Positions 11,270-64,000 of a stretch of DNA of 64,000 bases are shown piece by piece. The stretch comes from Octopus sinensis (Eukaryota), in contig NC_043020.1 in NCBI RefSeq assembly GCF_006345805.1, forward strand, positions 29,326,001 to 29,390,000, given 5' to 3'. Made by a program: the position numbers and the translations under genes. The notes beneath the pieces were generated by a model, which ran no database searches, was not told the DNA's origin, and saw nothing but the letters and a program-made list of their open reading frames with translations. Position 1 is the first letter of the stretch; each line of letters starts with the position of its first letter.

Positions 11270-11277
11270 TATTATTA

Positions 11278-11492
11278 AGGCAGCGAGCTGGCAGAATCGT
11301 TAGCACACCGGGCGAAATGCTTACCGGCATTTCGTCTGCCGCTACGGTCCTGAGCTCAAATTCCGCCGAGGTCGACCTTGTCTTTCATCCTTTCGAGGTC
11401 GACAAAATGAGTACCAGTTGAGCACTGGGGTCGCTGTAATCGATTATCCCCCTCCCCCGACATTTCAGGCCTTGTGCCTTTAGTAAGAAAGG
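11278..11492 (+). mobile_element. tRNA-headed SINE family A, full length
   Basis: GGCAGCGAGCTGGCAGAATCGTTAG (A-box-like), GAGCTCAAATTCC (B-box-like) and body GTCGACCTTGTCTTTCATCCTTTCGAGGTCGACAAAATGAGTACCAG. Confidence 0.9.
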
Positions 11493-26379: not shown

Positions 26380-26593
26380 GAAGGCGGTGAGCTAGCAGAA
26401 GCGTTAGCACGCCAGGTGAAATGCTTAACGGTATTTCGTCTGTCTTCGTGTTCTGAGTTCAAATTCCGCCGAGGTCGACTTTGACGTTCCTCCTTTCGGG
26501 GTCGATAAATTAAGTACCAGTTGCATACTGGAGTCGATCTAATCGACTGGCCGCTCCCCCAAACTTTCGAGACTTGTGCCTAGAGTAGAAAAG
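26380..26593 (+). mobile_element. family A SINE, full length, 16-bp TSD
   Basis: Flanked by AATATT(A/G)CAACCCTTG at 26364-26379 and 26594-26609 (one mismatch). Confidence 0.92.
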
Positions 26594-27709: not shown

Positions 27710-28324
27710 ATTTCCGGGTCCCAGTTTATAAGAGCCATCATCCAAAACATCCTTCTATATAGAAAGGCGGTAGGATGTAATTGAGATCGATTTAGCTTCT
27801 TGTTCTAGCATAACGACTTACTGCATAAGGGTCAGATGCTCAAACATATATGTATGTATATATATATGCATGTGTGTGTGTGCGTATATATATATATATA
27901 TATTTGTGTGTGTGCGTGAGTGTGTGTGTGTGTGCAGGTATGTATATGCATATATAAAATTGCGTATATTTATTTATACAAATGTCACTATAGATAGCCG
28001 AAAATTCATATATGTATATTGTGTTCAGTTATTTATATATCGAAATACAATGTCGAAATACACACACACACACACACACACACGCGCGCGCACACGCACA
28101 CACACAAACACTTACACAATCATGCCTTCATACACGTTAATATATACACATGCATACATATATTTACATATTCATATATATATACACACACATCTGTATG
28201 TGTCTGTGTGTGTATGTGCATATATACAAATATCAACAAAACACATCAAAACTCATATATATATATGCATATCCATATATATGTATATATATATGTTTGT
28301 ATGTATGTATATACATACACACAC

Positions 28325-28363
<39 letters not shown>

Positions 28364-28499
28364 ACACACACACACATATAGGTTTATGTGTGTGTATGTA
28401 TACTAATACTTGTATGTTCATTCATGTTTGTTTGTGTTGTAGGTTTTGTGTGTGTGTAAGTGTGTGTATGTGTGCATGCGTGTATATGTATGTGTGTGT

Positions 28500-28628
28500 G
28501 TGTCGTGTGTGCATGCAGAGTGTATGTGTGTGTAGTGGTATGTGCGCATGTGTATATATAATATATTGTGTGTATGTGTGTGTCGTTTGTACATGCCAGT
28601 GTGTATGTGTGTGTGTATGTGCGATGTG

Positions 28629-28670
<42 letters not shown>

Positions 28671-28882
28671 CATGCCAGAGTGTATGGGTGTGTGTGTGTA
28701 TGGCGCAGGGTATATAGATATATATATCTATATATATATATATGTGTGTATGTGTGTCGTTTGTACATGCCAGTGTGTATGTGTGTGTGTATGTGCGCAT
28801 GTGTATATATATATAATATATGTGTGTGTGGGTGTCGTGTGTTGCATGCCAGAGTGTATGTGTGTGTGTGTGTGTATGGCGC

Positions 28883-28924
<42 letters not shown>

Positions 28925-29030
28925 ATGTGTGTGTGTGCATGCCAGTGTGTATGTGTGTGTGTGTGATGTGCGCATGTGTATATAATATAAGTGTGTTTGT
29001 CGGTGTGTGCATGCCAGTGTGTGTGTGTGT
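28500..29030. repeat. minisatellite built from TG/TA microsatellites, ~174-bp dimeric period
   Basis: CATGC(C)AG anchors at 28512, 28592, 28671, 28766, 28845, 28938 and 29010. Confidence 0.8.
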
Positions 29031-29283
29031 GTGTTGCAGGGATAATGTATGCAAGAGGCTGAGTAGAAAAAGCAACAAAAAATGCAATGTGCGAATGTAT
29101 ATGAATCGCATTATTCTACACATCTCATATTCGTGTATCTCTGAGCACGAAAGCGTAGGTTGATTAAGCTAATAGTTCTTCATAAAAGGCCCTGCACGTG
29201 TTATTGAAATGCAACGCACGTTTAAATTTCCTGAATGCATTAAAGTTGCTAGCAAGCCCGGGACTCCGTTCAGGAAAGCATTG

Positions 29284-33468: not shown

Positions 33469-36109
33469 GGATGTGTATATCAGTGTATATATATTTTCTA
33501 CCTCTCTCCCCTTATTCTCTCGCTTATATATGTACGTGTGTGCATTTTCATACACATACACATACACACACATAATTTAATTTAAAAAATTGTAACTTAT
33601 ATGTCTCTAAAGGAATGCAAACTAAAGACATCTTGGGTCACTTCAAGTTTCGTGCTTTGACCTTAAAATATTTTGGCCGAAACCAAGTCAACAAAATCCT
33701 CCATTTCGATCCAGTTTTAAACTGCACTCACTATAAGTTTATGACAAAACTTTATATCGAAAACTCTGAGTATAACCAAAATCACACCTGTAGATGCATC
33801 CTGCAGTTATTGCCCTACGCTTAATTCTTAGAAGTTATAACCAAATTTTGACACCTAATGTCTTATACGTTTGTCTTTTTTAGAATACATAAAATAGGAA
33901 AATTCGAACTTCTCTTGTTCCATGTTTGTTATTATATACCCTGTGCACAGTTTTCACCGGGTATCATATATCTATATATATTTATTTTAATATATTGCAA
34001 ATGAAAGACGGAAGCTACCAGGTGTAAACGATTCGTTTTACTATCCATTGTTTATGTTAACATACATATTTTGAATTATATAGCTGTTGTTTTGTTTCGG
34101 TTTCTCAGCATATTATATTATATCATATGAAAAGCAACACCAAGATATTTGATTGAATGCAGACGACAACTTCAATTTTATTCTAAATCTTTCATTTCCC
34201 TGACAGACCAGTTGAATGAAGGTTTATACATACGCACCAAATGCACAAGATCTGAATGATAATAAATTTTGGGTTTTTATTTACAAATTTCAATGATCTG
34301 TCTTGAGTAAGGGTTGTCCCTGATACAAGCACACGCACACAAACACACACACATAGATATACAGACAGATATATGCATATAGATATATAGATAGATATCA
34401 ATATAATTCAATACAAATATATATAAACAATGCGTGTGTGTGTGTGTGTGTGTGTATACTAGTGTTATATATATTGTGAATGTGTGTGTGTGTCGTTTGC
34501 ATGCCTGCATTCATAAATGTATATATATATATATGGGTGTATGTACATGTACGTATGTATGTGTGTTTGTGTGTATGCATAGCGGTTGTATATGGGCCTC
34601 TCTCTGTGTGTATTCGTATGTTTTCATGAATAGAAAGAACCTACACACACACACAGACACACACCCAAACACCCAAACACACACATACACACACACCATC
34701 CAACCAATTCACCACTATGAGGTGTAACAATTCTTCGTTTCTTCAACGAAATAACCAACCATTCACTGTTTTCATTTCGTCCATATTGACTCTACCTCGC
34801 CACCTCCTCCTTCACCCCCACCACACACACACAAACACACACGTACACGCACACACACACACGTACACACACACCCAGCCAACATCTCCTACTCCTCCTT
34901 CCTCTCCCACCTCGTTCTCCGCCGTCCTCTTCCTTCCACCAATCCGCTGCTACCACCTGTTGCCGTCTTTCCCCGGACCGTCCTCGCTCTCCTTCTCCCC
35001 TTGCTCTCCGTTTCCCATTTAACGCTCGTGTGTGATGCAATGTGCAGAAACTCTGTATCAATCAAGCGGTTGCATCCTCCTACCGCCACTCCATGGCGGC
35101 GCCTCATTGCCTTATATAGTATTAGCGTGTGTTCGAGCTGGCTGGCTTTCATGTCCCAGCTTAGTGGAAGCCATCGAAGAACTTGTCACTTACGGCATTA
35201 TGTTAAATGGTAGTAGACTTACCCATCCATTCATGTAGTAGCCGTAACTAATTTACCCACCCCTCTAACCACCACCACCACCACCACAACCACTACCATT
35301 TCCATCGTCACCACCACCGCCGACAACAACAACTACCACCACCATCACCATCACCACCAATACTAACAGTTCCCCACCATCACCGCTGTCGTTTGATGGC
35401 TTCACTATACCGTATGTATGTGTGTGTGGTTGTGTGTGTGTGCGTGTGTGCAAGAGATAAGTATCTGATTGTGTGTGAGTGTGTGTGTGTATGTGTATGA
35501 GCATATATGTGGATGATTGTGTGTGCGACAGAGACGGTGAGAGAGATTGTGTGTGTGTGTGTGGTGTGTGCATGTGTGTACATTTGTGTGTGTGTGCAAG
35601 GGATAAGTATCTGATTGTGTGTGTGTGTGTATCTTCTTGTGTACAACAGAGAGATAATAAATACGTGTGTGTTTGTGTGTGAGTGTGTGTGTGTGCAACC
35701 GAGAATTTAATGTGTGTCTCTGTGTGTGTGTGTGTCTGTGCATTCATATGTGTGTGACATTTATGTGGATCAGTGTGTGTGTGCGGCAGACACGGTGATA
35801 CAGACTGAGTATATCTATGTGTATATGTATGTACGTCTGTGTGTATGTCTGTGCATGCATGTATGTGCATTAAGTGTGTGTGTATATATTTGTGTGTATG
35901 TATACGTGTGCATATGTGTATGTCTGCTTGTATGTGTTGCTGTCTGCGTGTACGACATTGATTGCGATTGTGTATGTCTGATCGTGTATATAAATATATA
36001 TACATGTCCGTGCAATATATAATATCAGTACTATATATATATATATATTAAGCGTGTGTGTTATGTATGGTGTATATGTGTACATGCATGTGTTTGTGTG
36101 TGTATATAT

Positions 36110-36500
36110 ATATGTATGTATGTATGTATGTCTGTATGTATGTATGTATGTATGTATGTATGTATGTATGCATGTATGTATGTATGTATGTATGCATGTA
36201 TGTATGTATGTATGTAAGTATGTCTGTCTGTATGTATGTATGTATGTATGTATGCATGTATGTATGTATGTATGTATGTATGTATGTATGTATGTATGTA
36301 TGTATGTATTTATGTATGTATGTATGTATGTATGTATGTATGTATTTATGTATGTATGTATGTATGCATGTATGTATGTATGTATGTATGTATGTATGTA
36401 TGTATGTATGTATGTATGTATGTATGTATGTATGTATGTATGTATGTATGCATGTATGTATGTATGTAAGTATGTATGTATGTATGTATGTATTATGTAT
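36110..36500. repeat. (TATG)n microsatellite
   Basis: Direct reading. Confidence 0.97.
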
Positions 36501-36859
36501 GTACACTCGTGAATGCATAACAGATAATGTGTTTTTGTACAGACTACTTACGAAATATATGCATGTGTACTTGCATATATACGTGAAAGTATGGATGTAT
36601 GTGCAGTTATACATATACGTATGTGTGTGCGCGTATGCTTATGTATATGTGTAAACAGGCCTGTATGTGAGTATGTATGTAGTACTTAACAGGCTCTTTC
36701 ACTTTTTAGTAACTTTTAATTTTACCGCAAGTATTGCTTCATTTTCATCTTGTGTTTCATATTGACTTCTTTCAGATATTCTTATTCTTTTTCTATATTG
36801 TGCCTTACTTCAGTTTATTGTTGCTGAGATATAATACCAACAAAGGTGATAATTTGTGG

Positions 36860-48581: not shown

Positions 48582-48719
48582 TATATATATATTATATATA
48601 TATATATTCAAGAATCTCTGGAACTGTCTGACAAACGAAGAAATAACTCTTTGTCTCTTTTTTGTGACCGTTTTTAACTCTACGTAGAATTTAAATCTCA
48701 AAAGCACACACAGAGACAT

Positions 48720-48874
48720 TGACACATACATACACACTTACATGCATACATACATACATACACACATACATACATACATACATACACACATACATACATA
48801 CATATATACATACATGTATACATACATGCATACATACATACATACATACAAACATATATACATATATACATACA

Positions 48875-48908
<34 letters not shown>

Positions 48909-49589
48909 CATACATACATATATACATACATACATACATACATACATGTATACATACATATATACATACATACATACATACATCCATACATACAAACATA
49001 CATACATACATACATACAAACATACATGCATGCATACATACATACATACACACATACATACATCCATACATACATACATACATACATACATACATACATG
49101 TATACATGCATATATACATACATACATACATACATACATACATCCATACATACAAACATACATACATACATCCATACATACATACATACATACATACATG
49201 TATACATGCATATATACATACATACATACATACATCCATACATACAAACATACATACATACATACATACATACATACATACATACATACATACATACATA
49301 CATACATGCATGCATACAAAGATACATACATACATGCATGTATACATGCATACATACATACATACATACATACATTCACACACACATACATGCATTTGTG
49401 CAAATATACATATATACATACGCACGTACATGCACACATACATAGATACATATAAATATATATATATGTATAAATATGTACATATATATATACACCACAC
49501 ACACATATAGATGTACATATATATATATATATATTTACACATACATACATACATACATACATACATACATTCATACATATATACATACA

Positions 49590-49620
<31 letters not shown>

Positions 49621-49730
49621 GTACGTACATACATACATCCATACATATATATATACATACATACACACATACACGCATACGTATATACATCCATGCATAC
49701 GTGCATACATACATCCATACCATCATACAT
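48720..49730. repeat. ~1-kb (TACA)n-based array
   Basis: Direct reading; source of the 225-339 aa MYVC ORFs. Confidence 0.97.
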
Positions 49731-50500: not shown

Positions 50501-50719
50501 TATTTCTTTACCCACAAGGGGCTAAACACAGAGAGGACAAACAAGGACAGACAAACGGATTAAGTCGATTACATCGACTCCAGTGCATAACTGGTACTTA
50601 ATTTATCGACCTCGAATAGATGAAAGGCAAAGTCGACTTTGAACTCAGAACGTAACGGCAGCCGAATTACGGCTACGCATTTCGCCCGGCGTGCTAACGT
50701 TTCTGCCAGATCGCCGCCT
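50501..50719 (-). mobile_element. family A SINE, full length, 15-bp perfect TSD
   Basis: TGAACACGCGATAAC at 50486-50500 and 50720-50734. Confidence 0.93.
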
Positions 50720-51164
50720 TGAACACGCGATAACGTCGTCCAAACCACTTAGGTCACACGCCTCCATTAGTAATTGAACTGTGCTTTAGTTTAGGCCTCA
50801 GAAGCACAAAAGGCAAAATCTACCCCGATGGTTACTTGAACTCCGACAGCAGAGAAACGGAACAAATACCACAAGATATTTCACCCGATAAATCTAACCC
50901 AACAACTATACCAATACGCGCTGCCTCTATATCTCTCTTCGTTAATCTCATGGATATGTCGACTTTCGAAAACCTTCAGACCGGTTAGAAGGCAAAAGAA
51001 TATTCGAAAATATTCTATCCTGTGGTCGAGCGAACCTTTGCTTGCGAAAATATCTAATCTAACGTAAATTTTATTTTATAATCAAAAATTAAAACCGTTT
51101 CGTTTTATTCTCAGCCATTAATATTTCGTGGTGAGACCATTAACAACTAAAATATATACAAATG

Positions 51165-56733: not shown

Positions 56734-57414
56734 ATAGAGAGAGAGACACACACACACACGTACATTTGGCTGTTCCTGTATTTTTATACAAATCTATCCA
56801 CACTCACACATACAGATTAATGTTCGTTTGAGCAGGTGCTCTCTTTGTATATCTACGTTTCTGTCTGTGCGATTCGGGTGTGTGTGTGCTTGTATGTATA
56901 TATGTGTGTGTGTGTGGTGTGTGTGTGTGTGTGTGTCTGTGTGTGTGTGTGAGTGTGTGTGTGTGTTCTGTAATTTATTCGTGTGTGTCTGTGTAACTGT
57001 GAGAATATATATTTTTAGTACATGTGTGTGTACGTGTGTGTGTACGTGTGTGTGTGTACGTGTGTGTATGTACGTGTGTCTGTGTGTCTGCTATTTTTGG
57101 CTGGTGTAAGATTTCCCTCTCGCTGTTGTTTCCTCGTCTCCATTAGAAAAATTGGATCCAAGATGTCTATTTCGGGAGAGTCTAAAGATAGAACACGATC
57201 TAAAAATAACCGCCTTCCTCCCCTTCCTTCTCTCTCCGAATTACTCTCTGCTACAGGAACGAAAGAGTGGAAGTCAGAGACGTTGGTTACGCGCGCACAT
57301 GCTGAGGGCAACCTAGTCACGTGAAGTGACGTGACGGCAGTTGTCTTTCCAACCCCCACACACCAACCCTTTCCTCCCCCATCCTTACATCCACCCACAA
57401 ATACTTACTGACCA

Positions 57415-57723
57415 CCTTCTTCTTCTACTTCTTCTTCTTCTTCTTCATCACCTTCTTCTTCACCTTCTTCTTCTTCTTCTTCTTCTTCTTCTTCTTCTTC
57501 TTCTTCTTCTTCTTCTTCTTCTTCATCACCCTCCTCATCATCGTCATCTTCTTTCTCCTTTTCTTCTTTATCATCATCATCATCATCATCTTCGTCTTCT
57601 TCTTCATCTTCATCTTCACCTTTTCTTCTTCTTCTTCTCTTCTTCTTCTTCTTCTTCATCATCATCATCATCTTTACCTTCTTCTTCACCTTTTTCTTCA
57701 TCATCATCTTCCTCCTATTCTTT

Positions 57724-57778
<55 letters not shown>

Positions 57779-58003
57779 GCTTCTTCTTCTTCTTCTTCTT
57801 CTTCTTCTTCTTTCTTCTTTCTCTCGCCGCCATCATCATCATCATCTTCTTCTTCACCTTCTTCTTTTCTTCTTCGCCATCATCATCATCATCTTCTTCT
57901 TCACCTTCTTCTTTTTCTTCTTCTTCATCTTCACCTTCTTCTCCTTCCTCTTCTTGTTCACCTTTTTCTTCTTCATCATCATCATCATCTTCTTCTTCTT
58001 CGC

Positions 58004-58040
<37 letters not shown>

Positions 58041-58287
58041 TTCTTCTTCTTCTTCTTTTCTTCTTCTTCTTCACCTTCTTCTTCTTTTTCTTCTTCACCT
58101 TCTTCTTTTTCTTCTTCATCTTCATCTTCACCTTCTTCTCCTTCCTCTTCTTCTTCACCTTTTTTTCATCATCATCATCATCATCATCTTCTTCTTCACC
58201 TTCTTTCTTTTTCTTCTTCTTCTTCATCATCTTCACCTTCTTCTCCTTCTTCTTCTTCATCATCATCATCATATTCTTCTTCTTCGC

Positions 58288-58326
<39 letters not shown>

Positions 58327-58690
58327 TCATCTTCTTCTTCTTCACCTTTATCTTCTTCTTCTTCTTCTTCTTTTTCTTCTTCCTTTTTCTTCTTCTTCTT
58401 CATCTTCACCTTCTTCTCCTTCCTCTTCTTCTTCACCTTTTTCTTCTTCATCATCATCATCTTCTTCTTCGCCATCATCATCATCATCATCGTCATCATC
58501 ATCATCATCATCTTCTTCACCTTCTTCTTCTTCACCTTCTTCTTCTTTTTCTTCTTCTTCTTCTTCTTCTTCTTCTTCTTCATCATCTTCACCTTCTCCT
58601 CTTCTTCTTCTTCACCTTTTTCTTCATCCTCCTCCTCCTCATCGCCATCATCATCTTTTCCTTCCTCTTCTTTTCCTTCTCCCCCATTGT
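57415..58690. repeat. 1.3-kb complex (CTT)n/(CAT)n triplet array with recurring sub-units
   Basis: Direct reading; recurring cassettes CTTCACCTTCTTCTCCTTCCTCTTCTT and CTTCTTCGCCATCATCATC. Confidence 0.92.
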
Positions 58691-59046
58691 TTATCTTGAA
58701 CTTTATTCGCAATTCACTCATTCCATTGCTTTCTTTTATCACTCTCTCTCTCTTTCTCTCACTCTTAAGGGACACGTTTAACTGGCAGGTTGAGAGACGG
58801 GCAGGTAGCCGGGCGGACAGACAGACAGACAGACAGACGGACTTTGGAATAGACTTGGGGGAAGGACTTGGAGAAATACTATCAAACATCAACCCGATGG
58901 CTGAATAGAAATAGTTCGGGACAGATCGACAAATACGCTAAAGAGACAGACAGATACATACATAAACAGAGAGACAGAAATACAGAGAGAGAGAGACAGA
59001 AATATAGAGAGACAGACAGACAGATAAATCTAAAGACAAGCATATT

Positions 59047-59084
<38 letters not shown>

Positions 59085-59359
59085 AACAGCGAGGGAGACT
59101 TAGGGGTAAGCAGATGGACACATACATAGAGATATGTAGACATGTATATAGATAGAGAAAGAGGGGTTTGGAGGCAGATCGAGAAGTTGGTAGTGTATGC
59201 CAGACAATTGGTTGTGTGACAGACGTTCTGAGACGGTAACAGATGAGTTGACTGGGATAGTTTGGCAGAGTTGTTGATAACACGATGAATAATCAGACAC
59301 AGAGACATGTGACTGGGTGACAGTTCGACTGATACTATGATTTAGATGAGATGACACTA

Positions 59360-59930
59360 TAATAGGAACAAGGCTCGAAATCTTTGGGGAGGAAGACAGT
59401 CGATTACATCAACCCCAGTGCGTAACTGGTACTTATTTAATCGACCCCGAAAGGATGAAAAGCAAAGTCGACCTCGGCGGAATTTGAACTCAGAACGTAA
59501 CGGCAGACGAAATACCTATTTCTTTATTACCCACAAGGGGCTAAACACAGAGGGGACAAACAAGGACAGACAGGTATTAAGTCGATTACATCGACCCCAG
59601 TGCGTAACTGGTACTTAATTTATCGACCCCGAAAGGATGAAAGGCAAAGTCGACCTCGGCGGAATTTGAACTCAGAACGTAACGCAGACGAAATACCTAT
59701 TTCTTTATTACCCACAAGGGGCTAAACACAGAGGGGACAAACAAGGACAGACATAGGTATTAAGTCGATTACATCGACCCCAGTGCGTAACTGGTACTTA
59801 ATTTATCGACCCCGAAAGGATGAAAGGCAAAGTCGACCTCGGCGGAATTTGAACTCAGAACGTAATGGCAGACGAAATACCGTTAAGCATTTCGCTCGGA
59901 GCGCTAACGTTTCTGCCAGCTCGCCGCCTT
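59360..59930 (-). mobile_element. family A SINE with tandemly triplicated body (~181-bp unit)
   Basis: Single head at ~59875-59930. The unit junction ACCTATTTCTTTATTACCCACAAGGGG occurs at 59514 and 59695, and the units are nearly identical. Confidence 0.9.
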
Positions 59931-60427
59931 GCAGACATGTTTATTCTATGACAAATATGTTTACTCATTGACAATATTATTTATGACGACTTTTTCATAT
60001 TTCCTTCTGAATCCATTGCAACTTTTTTCGACCGTCGCTTGAAGAAAATCTTTAGTTGGTGACACCTAGAACCAGATGGTTCTTACTCAGCACTGCAATT
60101 CCAGCAAATCCATCATCTGAATCGGCAATGGACACTTCCGTGCATCACAAATCCTGCAAGATCGCCAATCTTCAAAATTTCAGTAACAATGGAACCCCTT
60201 CAAATTTCGTGGAATTCTCCTTCTCCCTACTTCTCAAACATATTGTAGTTCAGTAAATTGTATGTGGAAAAAAACTTTGCGCACTAAATACTTGTTTAGC
60301 ATCCAGTTCAGCACCGCACATACATGGTAACGGTTAAATCGAGTCACTTCCACCATCAAACCCCCTTATCACGCTCAAATACATCTAAGTACGAAGGTAC
60401 TTCCGTTTACTTGAAACTAAGAAAACC

Positions 60428-60637
60428 CACCAAAAGGGCAAAAGCTCGCTCGATCTCGATTTTTCAATACGAATACAGACCGCGAAAGCGTGGCCTATCG
60501 ATCCTTTCCGAACAGCGGTGAGCAAAGCGTCTGCTGATAGGGGTCAGAAAAGTTTCCACGGGGATAACTGGTTTGGGGCAAGTCGATTCCTATGCAAGCG
60601 ATCCTTTTCGTTTCGATCTCTTCGAACGCTCACCAAA
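60428..60637 (+). rRNA. degenerate 28S (LSU) rRNA fragment, pseudogenic, domain V / peptidyl-transferase region
   Basis: AAGGGCAAAAGCTCGCTCGATCTCGATTTTTCAATACGAATACAGACCGCGAAAGCGTGGCCTATCGATCCTT...GTCAGAAAAGTTTCCACGGGGATAACTGG follows the conserved eukaryotic 28S sequence (recalled: GTCAGAAAAGTTACCACAGGGATAACTGGC). The 3' part is more decayed. Confidence 0.88.
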
Positions 60638-61661
60638 TTCTTTAATTTCTTACTCCATACATAAAGGACACAAAAATACCACGGCACCATTAGAGATGGT
60701 TTCCAAGATCTTTGTTCTTAGAATCGTATATACTACGATTTTTATTTTTTGGAAGCTAGCTACGGTAACCCCATTTTCAAGAAAGGCAAACCTTTTTATC
60801 ATAATACCTACCCTTGTATTATATTCACTTCCGATCTTTTAAACGTGATGAAAATAGCTATTAACAATAAGGTTCCTCAACAGCTTGATTCCCTTTCCAT
60901 TCGATGACCACCAAAATGGCTTTCGTTGAGTCAGATCTACGGCACATCTACTCGCCCACGCCACTCACCAGTGGGTTTTCACCTTGGTTAGATTTGGTGA
61001 AAACTGCGTTATTGCATTTGATGGCAGCAAAACATTCGATTGTGTCTGGCACACAAACGTCTTGCGAAGACTGTCCTCCATCAGTCTTTTATTTTGGGGA
61101 TCGATGGTGCCCCCTCAGACCGTAATGTTGTGGGCGCTCCCTGGTGAAGCTTCCTTTCAACTGCACCCTATCAACTAATGTCTGCCCAACGAGCCCGGTT
61201 TCGGCACACACACTCACTTTTCCTCTTCCATAATAACAACTCACTTGCTCTCAACCTCAACAAATGCAAATCTTATAAAAAAGGACATGACCCTACATAC
61301 CTGCAACACCATCTGAACCCAAGCATCATCTACAAACAATCTGGACATTTCGCGTCAAAGCTGCTCCAACACGAAGGGTCAATTTTGTCCCCTTTAACAG
61401 CACCACAGAGGCACAATCAAGAAAATATTATCATTGTACCTCACCACTCTTTCTCCTGTACATGAATGCCACAAAACGAGAACCATTAATCCGGCTATAA
61501 AGGCCCCCACTCCACTCATTGAGGATTTCTCGTACCGAATACAGATACCTAATAGAGCAAAGACTTCGGCTCAAAAGCTGAACTTCCTCTTCAGAACTAT
61601 GAAATACTTCGAATCCCACTGAGCACTGTAGCGTGTTACGACTATTTAATATTTCCCTTGT

Positions 61662-61868
61662 TGAATGCGGTGAGCTGGCAGAAATGTTAGCACGGCGGGC
61701 AAAATGCTTAGCGGTATTTCGCCTGCCGCTACGTTCTTAGTTCAAATTCCGCCTAGGTCGACTTTGCCTTTCATCCTTTCGGGATCGATAAATTAAGTAT
61801 CAGTTGGGTACTAATCGACTGCCCCCACCTCCTCCAAGATTTCGGGCTTTGTGCCTAGAGTAGACAAG
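61662..61868 (+). mobile_element. family A SINE with 14-bp perfect TSD, nested in the LINE
   Basis: AATATTTCCCTTGT at 61648-61661 and 61869-61882. Confidence 0.93.
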
Positions 61869-62963
61869 AATATTTCCCTTGTCTACAATATGGCAGGGAT
61901 ATATGCGCAACCACCTAAAACGAACCAACGAGTGACCGAAGTGTATGTGGTCGCTCTATGTGTTAGAAACAACAGTCAAAAATCCTTCTAACTGCACGTG
62001 ATTGTCTCACAGTGAACATATTGGATTCTGCTGACATAAATATCGAAGATGCTTTGACCTACACAGAAACGGCCAGAGCCACTCAGAGGTTTTGCAAGCT
62101 TTTCTTCGAAATCAATCACTGGTGAAAATCCTTCCTTATATTCTGCCAGCATCTGAAAATCAACAAGGGGTCGGTTATGACTACACACCCAGTTGCTCTG
62201 CTTGCACAGTTTCCCATGACTTTCTGTACCGTCCAATTTAACCTTTTTTTTTTTTATCGGGATCTTGGGCCATAAGGAATTTTCCATTGCTCGATTACAC
62301 AACCACGGACGCCGCCTCTGCCTACGTTACAGTTACTCTCTTGACAAAACTTGGTGATCCTAACCGTTGATCTTCAAGGATTCCTCTGCTTTGCATCAAC
62401 GAAAGAAGCACCGTTGGCTCAGAGGATCTCTTCCGCTCCCTCTTTACATCCTTAGCAGGCTCGCTGAACCGGATGTTATACCTTAGCAAAGGGCAATCCA
62501 TAATAATGCAAGGCACAGTCAGCACTCCGTAAGATATTTTCAAATTACTTGCACACCCGTGACTGAAACATCCTTTATTAGTGGTATCCTGTAGGGTGGA
62601 CGCTAACAACAAATATGACCCCTTCATTACTCCTTCTCTTCTGAATTCTTCTATATCTTAAAGGGAAATTTCAAGAATTACGCAAAAAAAAAGTCTCTTG
62701 GTTCCTCAACATTTGACTTCCACATTTTCTCTTCTCTTCACCCTTTTATTATAACCTTTTCCAACTTCCATACTCTCTGACAGATAGTCTCTCTCTCTCT
62801 CTCTCTCTCTCTCAAACTATCTATCTAGATATTTGTCTGTCTGCCTGCCTCTCTGTCTGTTTGTCTGTTTGTCTATCACAGTAACTATCTAAATTTCGCG
62901 CTCTTTCCCTTCCATATATTTATTTATTTATTTATTATGTATTATATATATATATATATATCT

Positions 62964-62994
<31 letters not shown>

Positions 62995-63107
62995 CAGACA
63001 AACAGACAGATAGATAGATATCATGCATACATATATGCAACATATATGCATATCTATATATATGTATATATATCTGTTAATCTATCTCTATTTTATATAT
63101 TATATTT

Positions 63108-63140
<33 letters not shown>

Positions 63141-63285
63141 GCACAATACAATCACTGTTAAGGTTTGAACGTACGTATGTATGTATGTGTGTGCATGCAT
63201 GTATATATGTATGTATGCATGCATAAAAGTATCTATCTATCTATCTACCTACCTGCCTACCTACCTACCTACCTACCTACCTATA

Positions 63286-63339
<54 letters not shown>

Positions 63340-63465
63340 CCTATAGATAGATATGTGTATTTTCATATCCCCTTAATTATCAATCTCTCTCTATATATCT
63401 TGCTAAAAAATCTCTCCATCCTTATCTTCCTCATTCCGACATCACATCATATATCTCTCCTCTCT

Positions 63466-63514
<49 letters not shown>

Positions 63515-64000
63515 CTTCTCTATTTCTCCATATCTTTGCATCTCTTCCTGATACAACGTTTCCCTGTCACCTATATTCTTTCTCACGCAGACTCCATCTT
63601 TCTATATCTCTGTCTCTACATCCAAAACCCCTAACTGTCCCCGTGCTCTCTCTTTCATTCACTCATTCATTCTCATTCATACGCACACACACACATACAC
63701 ACACACATATATTTATGAATATATATATATATGTATATATCATATGAATGCATACAAACATACATACATACACGCATAGCCATATATGAACGTACGTACA
63801 GTAAACAACGTTTTTTCCCCAGCCAAAAGCTAGCTCTCCGTCAGTTATCTCCCCTTTGCCAACCTCTCCAGCACCTCCTTGCTCTACCTCCATTCCATTA
63901 AACACACACACAGACACACACACACACACACACACACACTACAGTCTGTCTCTTAATGAACGGCTCGGCTGTGCAGGCGCCGCTGCTCTGCTTCTTGCTG

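What the first reader, a model, noticed from the sequence alone, without database searches (positions are those of the whole stretch)
60428..60637. 28S rRNA peptidyl-transferase-region fragment embedded inside a LINE ORF2
Seen: ~210 bp that follows conserved 28S sequence, including GGGGATAACTGG. LINE ORF2 similarity runs up to it (...VRRYFRLLETKK) and resumes after it (...WKLATV...DGSKTFDCVWH), at about the position of the usual GPDGIP motif. Both are on the same strand, and CACCAAA brackets the insert (60428-60434, 60631-60637). Established: GGGATAAC corresponds to the A2451 region of E. coli 23S; LINE RTs make RNA chimeras by template switching; 28S-derived SINEs are known in mammals; R1/R2-type elements do the reverse and insert into 28S. 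Inference: a double template switch (LINE to rRNA to LINE) using microhomology, or a retroposed rRNA piece with a short TSD. If multi-copy, it would be an rRNA-carrying LINE subfamily or a 28S-derived SINE that I do not know from cephalopods.
Basis: partly seen in the sequence, partly recalled or inferred. Interest (0 to 1): 0.75.

Follow-up and report, generated by a model that had tools for sequence, protein, structure and literature searches.

The report
Decayed 28S fragment nested in LINE
A roughly 200-base, mutated piece of large-subunit ribosomal RNA sits inside an old, broken copy of a LINE retrotransposon, bracketed by a 7-base duplication; it looks like an ordinary one-off retro-insertion, not a new kind of mobile element.

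Summary
Window 60431 to about 60625-60634 (+ strand) derives from eukaryotic 28S rRNA domain V. Scanned alone it scores 76.3 bits against Rfam LSU_rRNA_eukarya (gathering score 50, E=1.5e-18). It aligns to 54 real 28S sequences at about 77% identity (E about 5e-32). GGGATAAC (60561-60568) matches E. coli 23S 2445-2452.

Both flanks belong to one colinear, decayed ORF2 of an APE-type LINE on the same strand. Removing the insert plus one CACCAAA copy lets the flanks align to a profile of relatives with no gap at the junction (110 bits). The left flank's contribution beats 1000/1000 random controls. The GPDG motif is not replaced; its remnant (SPNSLI) lies just after the insert.

The fragment is a dead pseudogene piece: about 10% of universally invariant positions are changed in its first 150 nt, and the last 55 nt are badly eroded.

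The most likely history is a single nested insertion with a 7-bp target-site duplication into an already integrated LINE copy. A SINE-like repeat with a 14-bp duplication is nested in the same copy. A double template switch is not excluded.

Genome-wide copy number and orthologous empty sites could not be tested here. The window holds only one copy. This is a known kind of event and of low interest.

The parts
60356..60427 (+). Left LINE flank: ORF2 segment just upstream of the GPDG motif (frame 3, SNPLITLKYI*VRRYFRLLETKKT). LINE sequence may extend left to 59931, but that is not demonstrable.
   Evidence: Butted to the right flank, it aligns to family HMM positions 319-341 with no gap and adds 7.5 bits. 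0/1000 random window pieces and 0/300 shuffles reach this. blastp of the joined flanks against P0007, P0001, P0020 and P0047 starts at residues 1-5.
60428..60434 (+). Left copy of the 7-nt direct repeat CACCAAA (putative target-site duplication). Its last 4 nt (CAAA) also match 28S.
   Evidence: Read directly. 28S similarity starts at 60431. Chance expectation for such a bracketing repeat is about 1.5%.
60431..60634 (+). 28S (LSU) rRNA-derived fragment, domain V including the peptidyl-transferase loop. Corresponds to Rfam model positions 2699 to about 2895 and to E. coli 23S about 2326-2500. It is well preserved to 60581 and heavily decayed from 60582. The right end lies somewhere in 60625-60634.
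   Evidence: cmscan 76.3 bits, E=1.5e-18. blastn against 54 real 28S sequences E about 5e-32. Alignments. E. coli alignment. Weak but colinear right part.
60560..60571 (+). GGGGATAACTGG, the peptidyl-transferase-centre motif. GGGATAAC at 60561-60568 corresponds to E. coli 23S 2445-2452, so the A2451 equivalent is 60567.
60631..60637 (+). Right copy of the direct repeat CACCAAA. It overlaps the LINE codons tCA CCA AAt (S-P-N), the remnant of G-P-D.
60630..60647 (+). Decayed GPDGI motif of ORF2 (SPNSLI, frame 1).
   Evidence: Alignment of the joined flanks to the family HMM and to the relatives' '..NKAxGPDGIP..' block.
60638..61661 (+). Right LINE flank: reverse-transcriptase domain of ORF2. It carries several frameshifts and in-frame stops. 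Motifs present are WKLATVTPIFKKG, HQNGFR.VRST and AFDGSKTFDCVWH.
   Evidence: HMM hits at 60696-61082 (70 bits), 60767-60892 and 61524-61628. tblastn with P0051 and P0045 covers 60900-61619. Weak Pfam RVT_1 match. 49 RT relatives at E<=1e-3.
61662..61868 (+). SINE-like interspersed repeat nested in the same LINE copy, with a 14-nt TSD AATATTTCCCTTGT at 61648-61661 and 61869-61882.
   Evidence: the repeat finder family D4 and inverted pair I1. At least 12 copies in the window. Removing it extends the LINE alignment across the site.
61883..61936 (+). Continuation of LINE ORF2 after the SINE-like insertion.
   Evidence: With the SINE-like repeat and one TSD copy removed, the HMM alignment runs 649-711 across the junction (12.2 bits against 3.8 before).

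Best explanation
This is a one-off nested insertion. An old genomic copy of an APE-type non-LTR retrotransposon (its relatives carry Exo_endo_phos_2 plus RVT_1, a jockey/CR1-like ORF2) was hit by a ~195-200-nt internal fragment of the host's 28S rRNA (domain V, peptidyl-transferase region). The hit fell between the 'L..L..KK' block and the GPDG motif, in sense orientation. Staggered cleavage of the target produced the 7-bp duplication CACCAAA.

The fragment most likely arrived as cDNA made by a LINE reverse transcriptase on abundant rRNA. Priming and joining would have been helped by short homologies: CAAA at the left junction, and possibly C..CC at the right.

Both the LINE copy and the insert have since decayed neutrally. 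Neither encodes or does anything now.

Shown: the 28S origin, the strand, the colinearity of the flanks, the direct repeat and the decay.
Inferred: that the target was DNA rather than LINE RNA, that the intermediate was RNA/cDNA, and that the event is single-copy.
For: - 28S origin.
- Flanks are one colinear ORF2. The empty-site join aligns to the family HMM at positions 319-487 with no gap at the junction (110.2-bit domain alignment, conditional E=1.3e-35). blastp of the join against P0007 covers 1-273 vs 254-526 at E=3e-24. The left flank adds 7.5 bits, unmatched by 1300 controls.
- Keeping exactly one CACCAAA copy fits the family spacing better than keeping none or both (110.5-111.8 bits vs 107.0 and 108.2). 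That is a duplication without loss of LINE sequence, as expected for a TSD.
- The bracketing 7-mer repeat has a chance expectation of about 1.5%.
- The same LINE copy holds a second nested retro-insertion with a clean 14-bp TSD. So this copy has been a target for TSD-forming insertions.
- There is only one rDNA-like piece and one copy of this LINE in 64 kb.
- The insert is decayed: 5/69 and 5/36 universally invariant positions are changed and the right third is eroded. This rules out fresh rRNA contamination.
- Dispersed 28S retro-fragments and 28S/LINE chimeras are documented in primates (bioRxiv 10.1101/2025.02.02.635956).
Against: - There is no poly(A), microsatellite or LINE-derived 3' tail between the insert and the right repeat. 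A canonical LINE-mediated retroposition signature is therefore missing.
- The 7-nt repeat is only moderately significant, and 4 of its 7 bases at the left (perhaps 4 at the right) could come from 28S itself.
- The decay of the insert (about 10% at invariant sites) is of the same order as that of the LINE. My rough inference for the LINE is 0.13-0.15 substitutions per site, from 9 in-frame stops in ~480 codons plus at least 4 frameshifts. So nothing shows that the insert is younger than the LINE copy.
- No orthologous empty site and no family consensus could be obtained.
Confidence: 0.55

Rival explanations
1. Double template switch during retrotransposition of this LINE copy. The reverse transcriptase copied LINE RNA from the 3' end up to CACCAAA, jumped onto 28S rRNA, copied about 195 nt, and jumped back to the same LINE RNA at the CAAA microhomology. 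It then re-copied 7 nt and continued upstream. On this reading the insert is as old as the LINE copy.
For: The insert is in sense orientation and the LINE is colinear on both sides. There is a 4-nt overlap (CAAA, 60431-60434) where LINE and 28S both match at the left junction. The insert has no tail. Insert and LINE show a similar degree of decay (rough inference). Template jumps by LINE RTs, including double jumps, are documented (PMC2104539), and 28S/L1 chimeras are mostly in sense orientation (bioRxiv 10.1101/2025.02.02.635956).
Against: It needs a return to the same RNA within 7 nt of the departure point, with no loss of LINE sequence. Described double-jump products join three different RNAs rather than re-entering the first (PMC2104539). 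A perfect flanking duplication is the simpler signature of insertion into DNA. By my own rough estimate from human numbers, independent rRNA-fragment insertions landing in LINE DNA should be far commoner than in-register double jumps.
Confidence: 0.2
2. DNA-level capture. A double-strand break in the LINE copy was repaired by end joining that trapped a fragment of rDNA, or of an existing rDNA pseudogene, as filler. Fill-in of staggered ends gave the 7-bp repeat. No reverse transcription was involved.
For: There is no poly(A) or LINE tail. Short homologies sit at the junctions. The fragment is internal to 28S and has arbitrary ends.
Against: Nothing distinguishes a DNA source from an RNA source here. 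rRNA is vastly more abundant than free rDNA fragments, and retro-derived rRNA pieces are the documented class. A 7-nt fill-in duplication is less typical of end joining than of endonuclease-staggered nicks.
Confidence: 0.1
3. Multi-copy element. The chimera is the founder or a member of a LINE subfamily that carries a 28S segment in ORF2, or the 28S piece is a low-copy rRNA-derived SINE-like retroposon of this lineage.
For: The left ORF2 frame stays open across the whole insert (92 codons from 60383). rRNA-derived SINEs exist elsewhere: SINE28 (PMC4994717) and the 5S SINEs (PMC10946416). Copy number could not be tested genome-wide.
Against: There is one copy of the insert and of this LINE in 64 kb, whereas the local SINE-like repeat has at least 12. 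The insertion adds 203 nt, which is not a multiple of 3. No single frame joins the left and right ORF2 parts, though later indels blur this. The insert has no tail, and I did not look for promoter motifs. No predicted protein in the 5.8-billion-cluster collection spans either junction. This last test has low sensitivity, because ORFs of this genome do not seem to be in that collection.
Confidence: 0.08
4. Assembly or library artefact: an rRNA or rDNA read mis-joined into the LINE.
For: rRNA-derived sequence is a common contaminant. Read support cannot be checked here.
Against: The fragment differs from real 28S at about 10% of positions that are invariant across eukaryotes, and its right third is eroded by indels. 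A contaminating read would be near-identical to functional 28S. The junctions are clean, with a perfect direct repeat.
Confidence: 0.03

Closest known systems
[quoted passage not shown]
   Same: An internal 28S fragment a few hundred nt long (primate median 269 nt, range 50-482), joined in sense orientation to LINE sequence on its 3' side. It is non-functional and attributed to LINE reverse transcriptase acting on abundant rRNA.
   Different: In the primate cases the 28S piece sits at the 5' end of a 5'-truncated L1, with unrelated target DNA upstream. Here the same LINE continues colinearly upstream, and a 7-nt repeat brackets the 28S piece alone. The LINE is a jockey/CR1-like APE-type element, not L1. 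There is no A-tail.
Bipartite and tripartite chimeric retrogenes formed by single or double template jumps of LINE RT (Magnaporthe MGL/Mg-SINE/WEIRD; PMC2104539)
   Same: They show that double jumps occur and that their products carry short flanking direct repeats (14 bp there).
   Different: Those chimeras fuse three different RNAs and the direct repeats flank the whole chimera. Here the first and third parts are the same LINE in register, and the repeats flank only the middle part.
SINE28, the mammalian SINE derived from 28S rRNA (PMC4994717)
   Same: It is 28S-derived sequence dispersed outside the rDNA.
   Different: [quoted passage not shown] This fragment is internal (model 2699 to about 2895 of 3401), has no tail, and is single in the window.
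R1/R2-type rDNA-specific LINEs
   Same: They involve a LINE and 28S sequence side by side.
   Different: The topology is reversed. R elements sit inside 28S genes with 28S on both sides. Here 28S sits inside a LINE, and the locus is not rDNA.

Membership tests
Eukaryotic LSU (28S) rRNA, Rfam RF02543 - as a derived fragment | Covariance-model score at or above the gathering score | tested here: met
   76.3 bits against a gathering score of 50, E=1.5e-18, when 60428-60640 is scanned alone. Not met in whole-window or 1.6-kb scans, because an internal fragment is only scored as truncated at the ends of the sequence given.
Eukaryotic LSU (28S) rRNA, Rfam RF02543 - as a derived fragment | Colinear nucleotide similarity to real 28S genes | tested here: met
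   60431-60625 against 54 metagenomic 28S sequences: 75-77% identity, E about 5e-32. Aligns to E. coli 23S 2326-2455.
Functional 28S rRNA gene | Full length and conservation of universally invariant positions | tested here: not met
   Only about 200 of 3401 model positions are present. 5/69 and 5/36 invariant columns are changed, and the right third is eroded. No other rDNA lies in the window.
APE-type non-LTR retrotransposon (LINE) ORF2 | Reverse-transcriptase motifs in order on one strand | tested here: met
   49 RT relatives. HMM of 12 relatives: 60696-61082, 61524-61628 and beyond. The joined flanks score 110 bits. Pfam RVT_1 on the decayed copy itself is below its cut-off (E=0.014).
APE-type non-LTR retrotransposon (LINE) ORF2 | Apurinic-type endonuclease domain upstream of RT | tested here: not met
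   Relatives P0001, P0020 and P0043 have Exo_endo_phos_2 plus RVT_1. No endonuclease remnant is detectable in the window upstream of 60350. The copy is 5'-truncated or interrupted by the SINE-like cluster at 59363-59930.
LINE-mediated retro-insertion (processed pseudogene type) | Target-site duplication flanking the insert | tested here: met
   Perfect 7-nt CACCAAA at 60428-60434 and 60631-60637. Chance about 1.5%. One copy restores the best ORF2 spacing.
LINE-mediated retro-insertion (processed pseudogene type) | 3' poly(A), microsatellite or LINE-derived tail | tested here: not met
   The sequence before the right repeat is ...CTTCGAACGCT, with no tail.
Template-switch chimeric retrocopy (Buzdin type) | Cellular RNA copy fused in sense orientation to the 5' end of a 5'-truncated LINE, with unrelated target DNA upstream and a TSD around the whole chimera | tested here: not met
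   Sense fusion to the downstream LINE part is present. However, the upstream flank is the same LINE in register, and the repeat brackets only the 28S piece. Only a re-entrant double switch would fit.
Template-switch chimeric retrocopy (Buzdin type) | Microhomology between donor and acceptor templates at the junctions | tested here: inconclusive
   The left junction shares CAAA between LINE and 28S. The right junction cannot be resolved because the 28S end is decayed. This needs the species' own 28S and the LINE consensus.
SINE28 / rRNA-derived SINE | [quoted passage not shown] | tested here: not met
   The fragment is internal: model 2699 to about 2895 of 3401.
SINE28 / rRNA-derived SINE | Multiple dispersed copies with the same termini | not testable with these tools
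   Single in the 64-kb window. No collection available here holds this genome. The left-junction pattern has 0 matches in JGI metagenome contigs.
R1/R2-type rDNA-specific LINE | The element interrupts a 28S gene, with 28S on both sides | tested here: not met
   The topology is the reverse, and there is no further rDNA in the window.

The most novel reading that the evidence does not exclude
The LINE-28S-LINE chimera, or the 28S piece on its own, is multi-copy in this genome and its relatives. That would be a LINE subfamily propagating a ribosomal peptidyl-transferase-region segment inside ORF2, or a low-copy 28S-derived retroposon outside mammals. In either case it would have arisen by a re-entrant double template switch.
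Probability: 0.07. Interest if true: 0.5.

Novelty: new member of a known kind. Interest (0 to 1): 0.15.

Why it matters
As it stands it matters little. It is one more example of abundant rRNA being reverse-transcribed or captured and dropped into repeat-rich DNA, here in a probable cephalopod genome (the organism was not verified).

It is a tidy case for annotation practice in two ways. A short, decayed rRNA fragment was invisible to a standard whole-window Rfam scan and became significant only when scanned alone. And it shows how an empty-site join can test whether two flanks belong to one element.

It would become moderately interesting only if genome-wide searches showed that the junctions are multi-copy. 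That would document a re-entrant double template switch that went on to propagate, or an rRNA-derived retroposon outside mammals.

Tried and rejected
- Whole-window Rfam scan at gathering threshold: 0 hits. This is a limitation of scanning an internal fragment, not evidence against 28S origin.
- The search for homologous proteins with the insert translated in the ORF2 frame plus flanks and with a stitched RT pseudo-protein: no hits. The copy is too decayed for the word index, and this LINE family is evidently not in that collection.
The stop-free 82-aa piece worked.
- Source look-up of the 10 best relatives: all come from ENA or JGI metagenome contigs, with no organism names.
- The look-up of encoding contigs with a window ORF to identify the record or organism: not on record.
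- Left-junction pattern in JGI metagenome contigs: 0 matches.
- Search for LINE remnants left of the SINE-like cluster (59000-59420, minus strand) and in 59931-60350: nothing significant.
- The 22-nt similarity between 60458-60479 and 61524-61545 is chance. The second site is RT coding sequence aligned to relatives.
- Weak H19_3 hit at 61125-61256 (E=2.5): chance.
- tRNA origin of the SINE-like repeat: not detected by ARAGORN or Rfam.
- Literature search for the repeat's sequence to confirm an octopus origin: nothing found.
- R1/R2-type interpretation: rejected on topology.

Full report
**1. The observation**

- CACCAAA lies at 60428-60434 and again at 60631-60637.
- GGGGATAACTGG lies at 60560-60571.
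- The + strand encodes ...VRRYFRLLETKK just before the first repeat.
- The + strand encodes ...WKLATVTPIFKKG... and ...AFDGSKTFDCVWH... after the second repeat.

**2. Is the middle piece 28S?**

A whole-window Rfam scan at gathering thresholds reported nothing. A 1.6-kb scan gave only a 15.4-bit partial LSU match, E=0.72. They are a scanning artefact.

When 60428-60640 is given alone, Infernal can treat the piece as truncated at both ends. It then scores 76.3 bits against LSU_rRNA_eukarya (gathering 50, E=1.5e-18), model positions 2699-2899 of 3401, + strand.

I then fetched 65 real rDNA contigs from metagenomes, using a 37-nt exact pattern taken from the insert.
- blastn of the window region against the 54 usable contigs aligns 60431-60625 at 75-77% identity over about 197 columns, E about 5e-32.
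- In E. coli K-12 rrlH, GGGATAAC is at 23S 2445-2452. Window 60561-60568 is therefore the peptidyl-transferase loop, with the A2451 equivalent at 60567.
- The fragment as a whole corresponds to about 2326-2500 of E. coli 23S.

The piece is not a functional rRNA.
- At columns invariant in at least 95% of the 54 references, it differs at 5 of 69 positions in 60431-60510.
- It differs at 5 of 36 such positions in 60546-60581.
- The last ~55 nt (60582-60637) are eroded by substitutions and indels. They show only weak, though colinear, similarity (local score p about 0.01-0.03).
- No other rDNA-like sequence exists in the 64 kb.

**3. Are the flanks one LINE?**

The copy is badly decayed. Pfam RVT_1 reaches only E=0.014, and word-indexed protein searches found nothing.

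A stop-free 82-aa stretch (60930-61175) searched with HMMER against 1.84 billion representatives gave 49 hits. These were about 50% identical over the 'QYGFR..RST..LD.SKAFD.VWH' block. The long hits carry Exo_endo_phos_2 plus RVT_1, which makes them APE-type non-LTR retrotransposons of jockey/CR1-like build. I could not assign a clade or an organism; all hits are unnamed metagenome proteins.

A profile of 12 relatives matches 60696-61082, 60767-60892 (a frame-shifted piece) and 61524-61628.

The critical test was the empty-site join. The left flank, read in its frame (...VRRYFRLLETKKT), was butted to the right flank in its frame (PPNSLISYSIHKG...), with the insert and one CACCAAA removed.
- The join aligns to profile positions 319-487 with no gap at the junction, 110 bits.
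- blastp of the join against P0007, P0001, P0020 and P0047 starts at residues 1-5 and runs through the junction.
- The 24 left-flank residues add 7.5 bits. None of 1000 random 24-residue pieces from the window and none of 300 shuffles reach this.

The flanks therefore do not belong to two different elements.

The relatives' alignment shows that the insertion point lies just before GPDG. The motif is not missing. Its remnant SPNSLI (60630-60647) follows the insert and overlaps the right CACCAAA.

Keeping exactly one CACCAAA copy gives the best spacing: 110.5 bits, or 111.8 with one extra residue. Keeping none gives 107.0 and keeping both gives 108.2. This difference is small but in the direction expected for a duplication without loss.

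**4. The surroundings**

The LINE copy is bounded on the left by a cluster of a SINE-like repeat (59363-59930, minus orientation, with three partial tandem units of about 182 nt).

It is also interrupted at 61662-61868 by another copy of that repeat. This copy has a perfect 14-nt duplication, AATATTTCCCTTGT. Removing it together with one duplicate extends the LINE alignment across the site: profile positions 649-711, 12.2 bits against 3.8 before.

The repeat occurs at least 12 times in the window. The 28S piece and this LINE occur once each.

**5. Mechanism**

Three things are shown.
- The 28S piece is in sense orientation.
- The LINE is colinear on both sides.
- A perfect 7-nt direct repeat brackets the piece, and one copy of it belongs to the LINE. 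The chance of such a bracketing repeat in non-repetitive parts of this window is about 1.5%.

The simplest history is a nested insertion into an already integrated LINE copy, with a 7-bp target-site duplication. The fragment would be a cDNA of abundant rRNA made by a LINE reverse transcriptase. The short overlap CAAA (60431-60434) matches both LINE and 28S and could have served in joining. I give this reading 0.55.

Its weak points are three.
- There is no tail at the 3' end of the insert.
- The significance of the repeat is modest.
- The insert is not visibly younger than the LINE. My rough inference is about 10% change at invariant 28S sites, against 9 in-frame stops in ~480 codons and at least 4 frameshifts in the LINE.

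It is compatible with every feature, and double jumps are documented (PMC2104539). However, it needs re-entry into the same RNA within 7 nt and in register, which has not been described. By my rough estimate it should be much rarer than independent rRNA-fragment insertions landing in LINE DNA. I give it 0.2.

The remaining rivals are:
- DNA-level capture of an rDNA fragment at a break: 0.1.
- A multi-copy chimeric subfamily or 28S-derived SINE: 0.08.
- An assembly artefact: 0.03. The decay of the fragment argues strongly against this.

Against propagation as an autonomous LINE, the event adds 203 nt, which is not a multiple of three, and no single frame links the two ORF2 halves. Later indels make this argument soft.

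**6. Comparison with what is known**

Dispersed 28S retro-fragments and 28S/L1 chimeras have been described in primates. There were 18 chimeras, with a median 28S segment of 269 nt, and 83% were in sense orientation (bioRxiv 10.1101/2025.02.02.635956).

[quoted passage not shown] This fragment is internal, has no tail, and is single in the window.

R1/R2 elements have the reverse topology.

The present case is a new instance of a known kind. Its one unusual trait is that the LINE continues in register on both sides, and nesting explains that most simply.

**7. What could not be done**

None of the collections available holds this genome.
- A junction pattern found nothing in JGI metagenomes.
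- A window ORF is not on record.
- I could not verify the organism. The SINE-like repeat was not recognised as tRNA-derived, and its sequence was not found in the paper library.

Copy number, orthologous empty sites, the LINE consensus and read support therefore remain the decisive open tests.

**Verdict**

This is an ordinary one-off event and of low interest.

Noticed in passing
window 59363-59930, 61662-61868, and about 10 further sites (e.g. 11277-11485, 26380-26593, 50589-50720): An abundant ~200-nt SINE-like interspersed repeat with at least 12 copies in 64 kb. One copy has a clean 14-nt TSD (AATATTTCCCTTGT). At 59363-59930 there are three partial units in tandem with a period of about 182 nt. 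ARAGORN and Rfam see no tRNA in it, so its origin and the host organism remain unverified.
   Followed up: partly
window 60428-60640 vs the whole window: Method note. The 28S fragment scores 0 hits in a whole-window Rfam scan, 15 bits in a 1.6-kb scan and 76 bits when scanned alone. Short internal rRNA fragments embedded in other DNA are systematically missed by standard cmscan runs.
   Followed up: yes
window 60060-60350: The LINE's left flank holds about 235 nt more than the relatives' linker between the 'EKA..F' block and the 'V.k.L..L..NK' block would predict. No similarity to the relatives is detectable there. It could be a lineage-specific linker, another small nested insertion, or non-LINE DNA.
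   Followed up: partly
window 60383-60673, frame 3: The left ORF2 frame stays open through the entire 28S insert (92 codons, ...KKTHQKGKSSLDLDF...FLLHT*). The other two forward frames of the insert have 1 and 3 stops. This is probably chance, given the composition of the 28S sequence.
   Followed up: partly
window 60511-60545: The variable helix of the 28S fragment is about 8-10 nt longer than in all 54 metagenomic 28S references, and its sequence is unlike theirs. Comparison with the host's own 28S would tell whether the donor was the host rRNA.
   Followed up: no
whole window (e.g. 928-2200, 28150-29163, 36048-36654, 48691-49730, 57341-58892, 62780-63750): Most of the window is microsatellite or low-complexity DNA: (TATG/CATA)n-like, (GA)n, (CT)n and trinucleotide runs. 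All long ORFs listed there are repeat artefacts, and no credible gene was seen.
   Followed up: no
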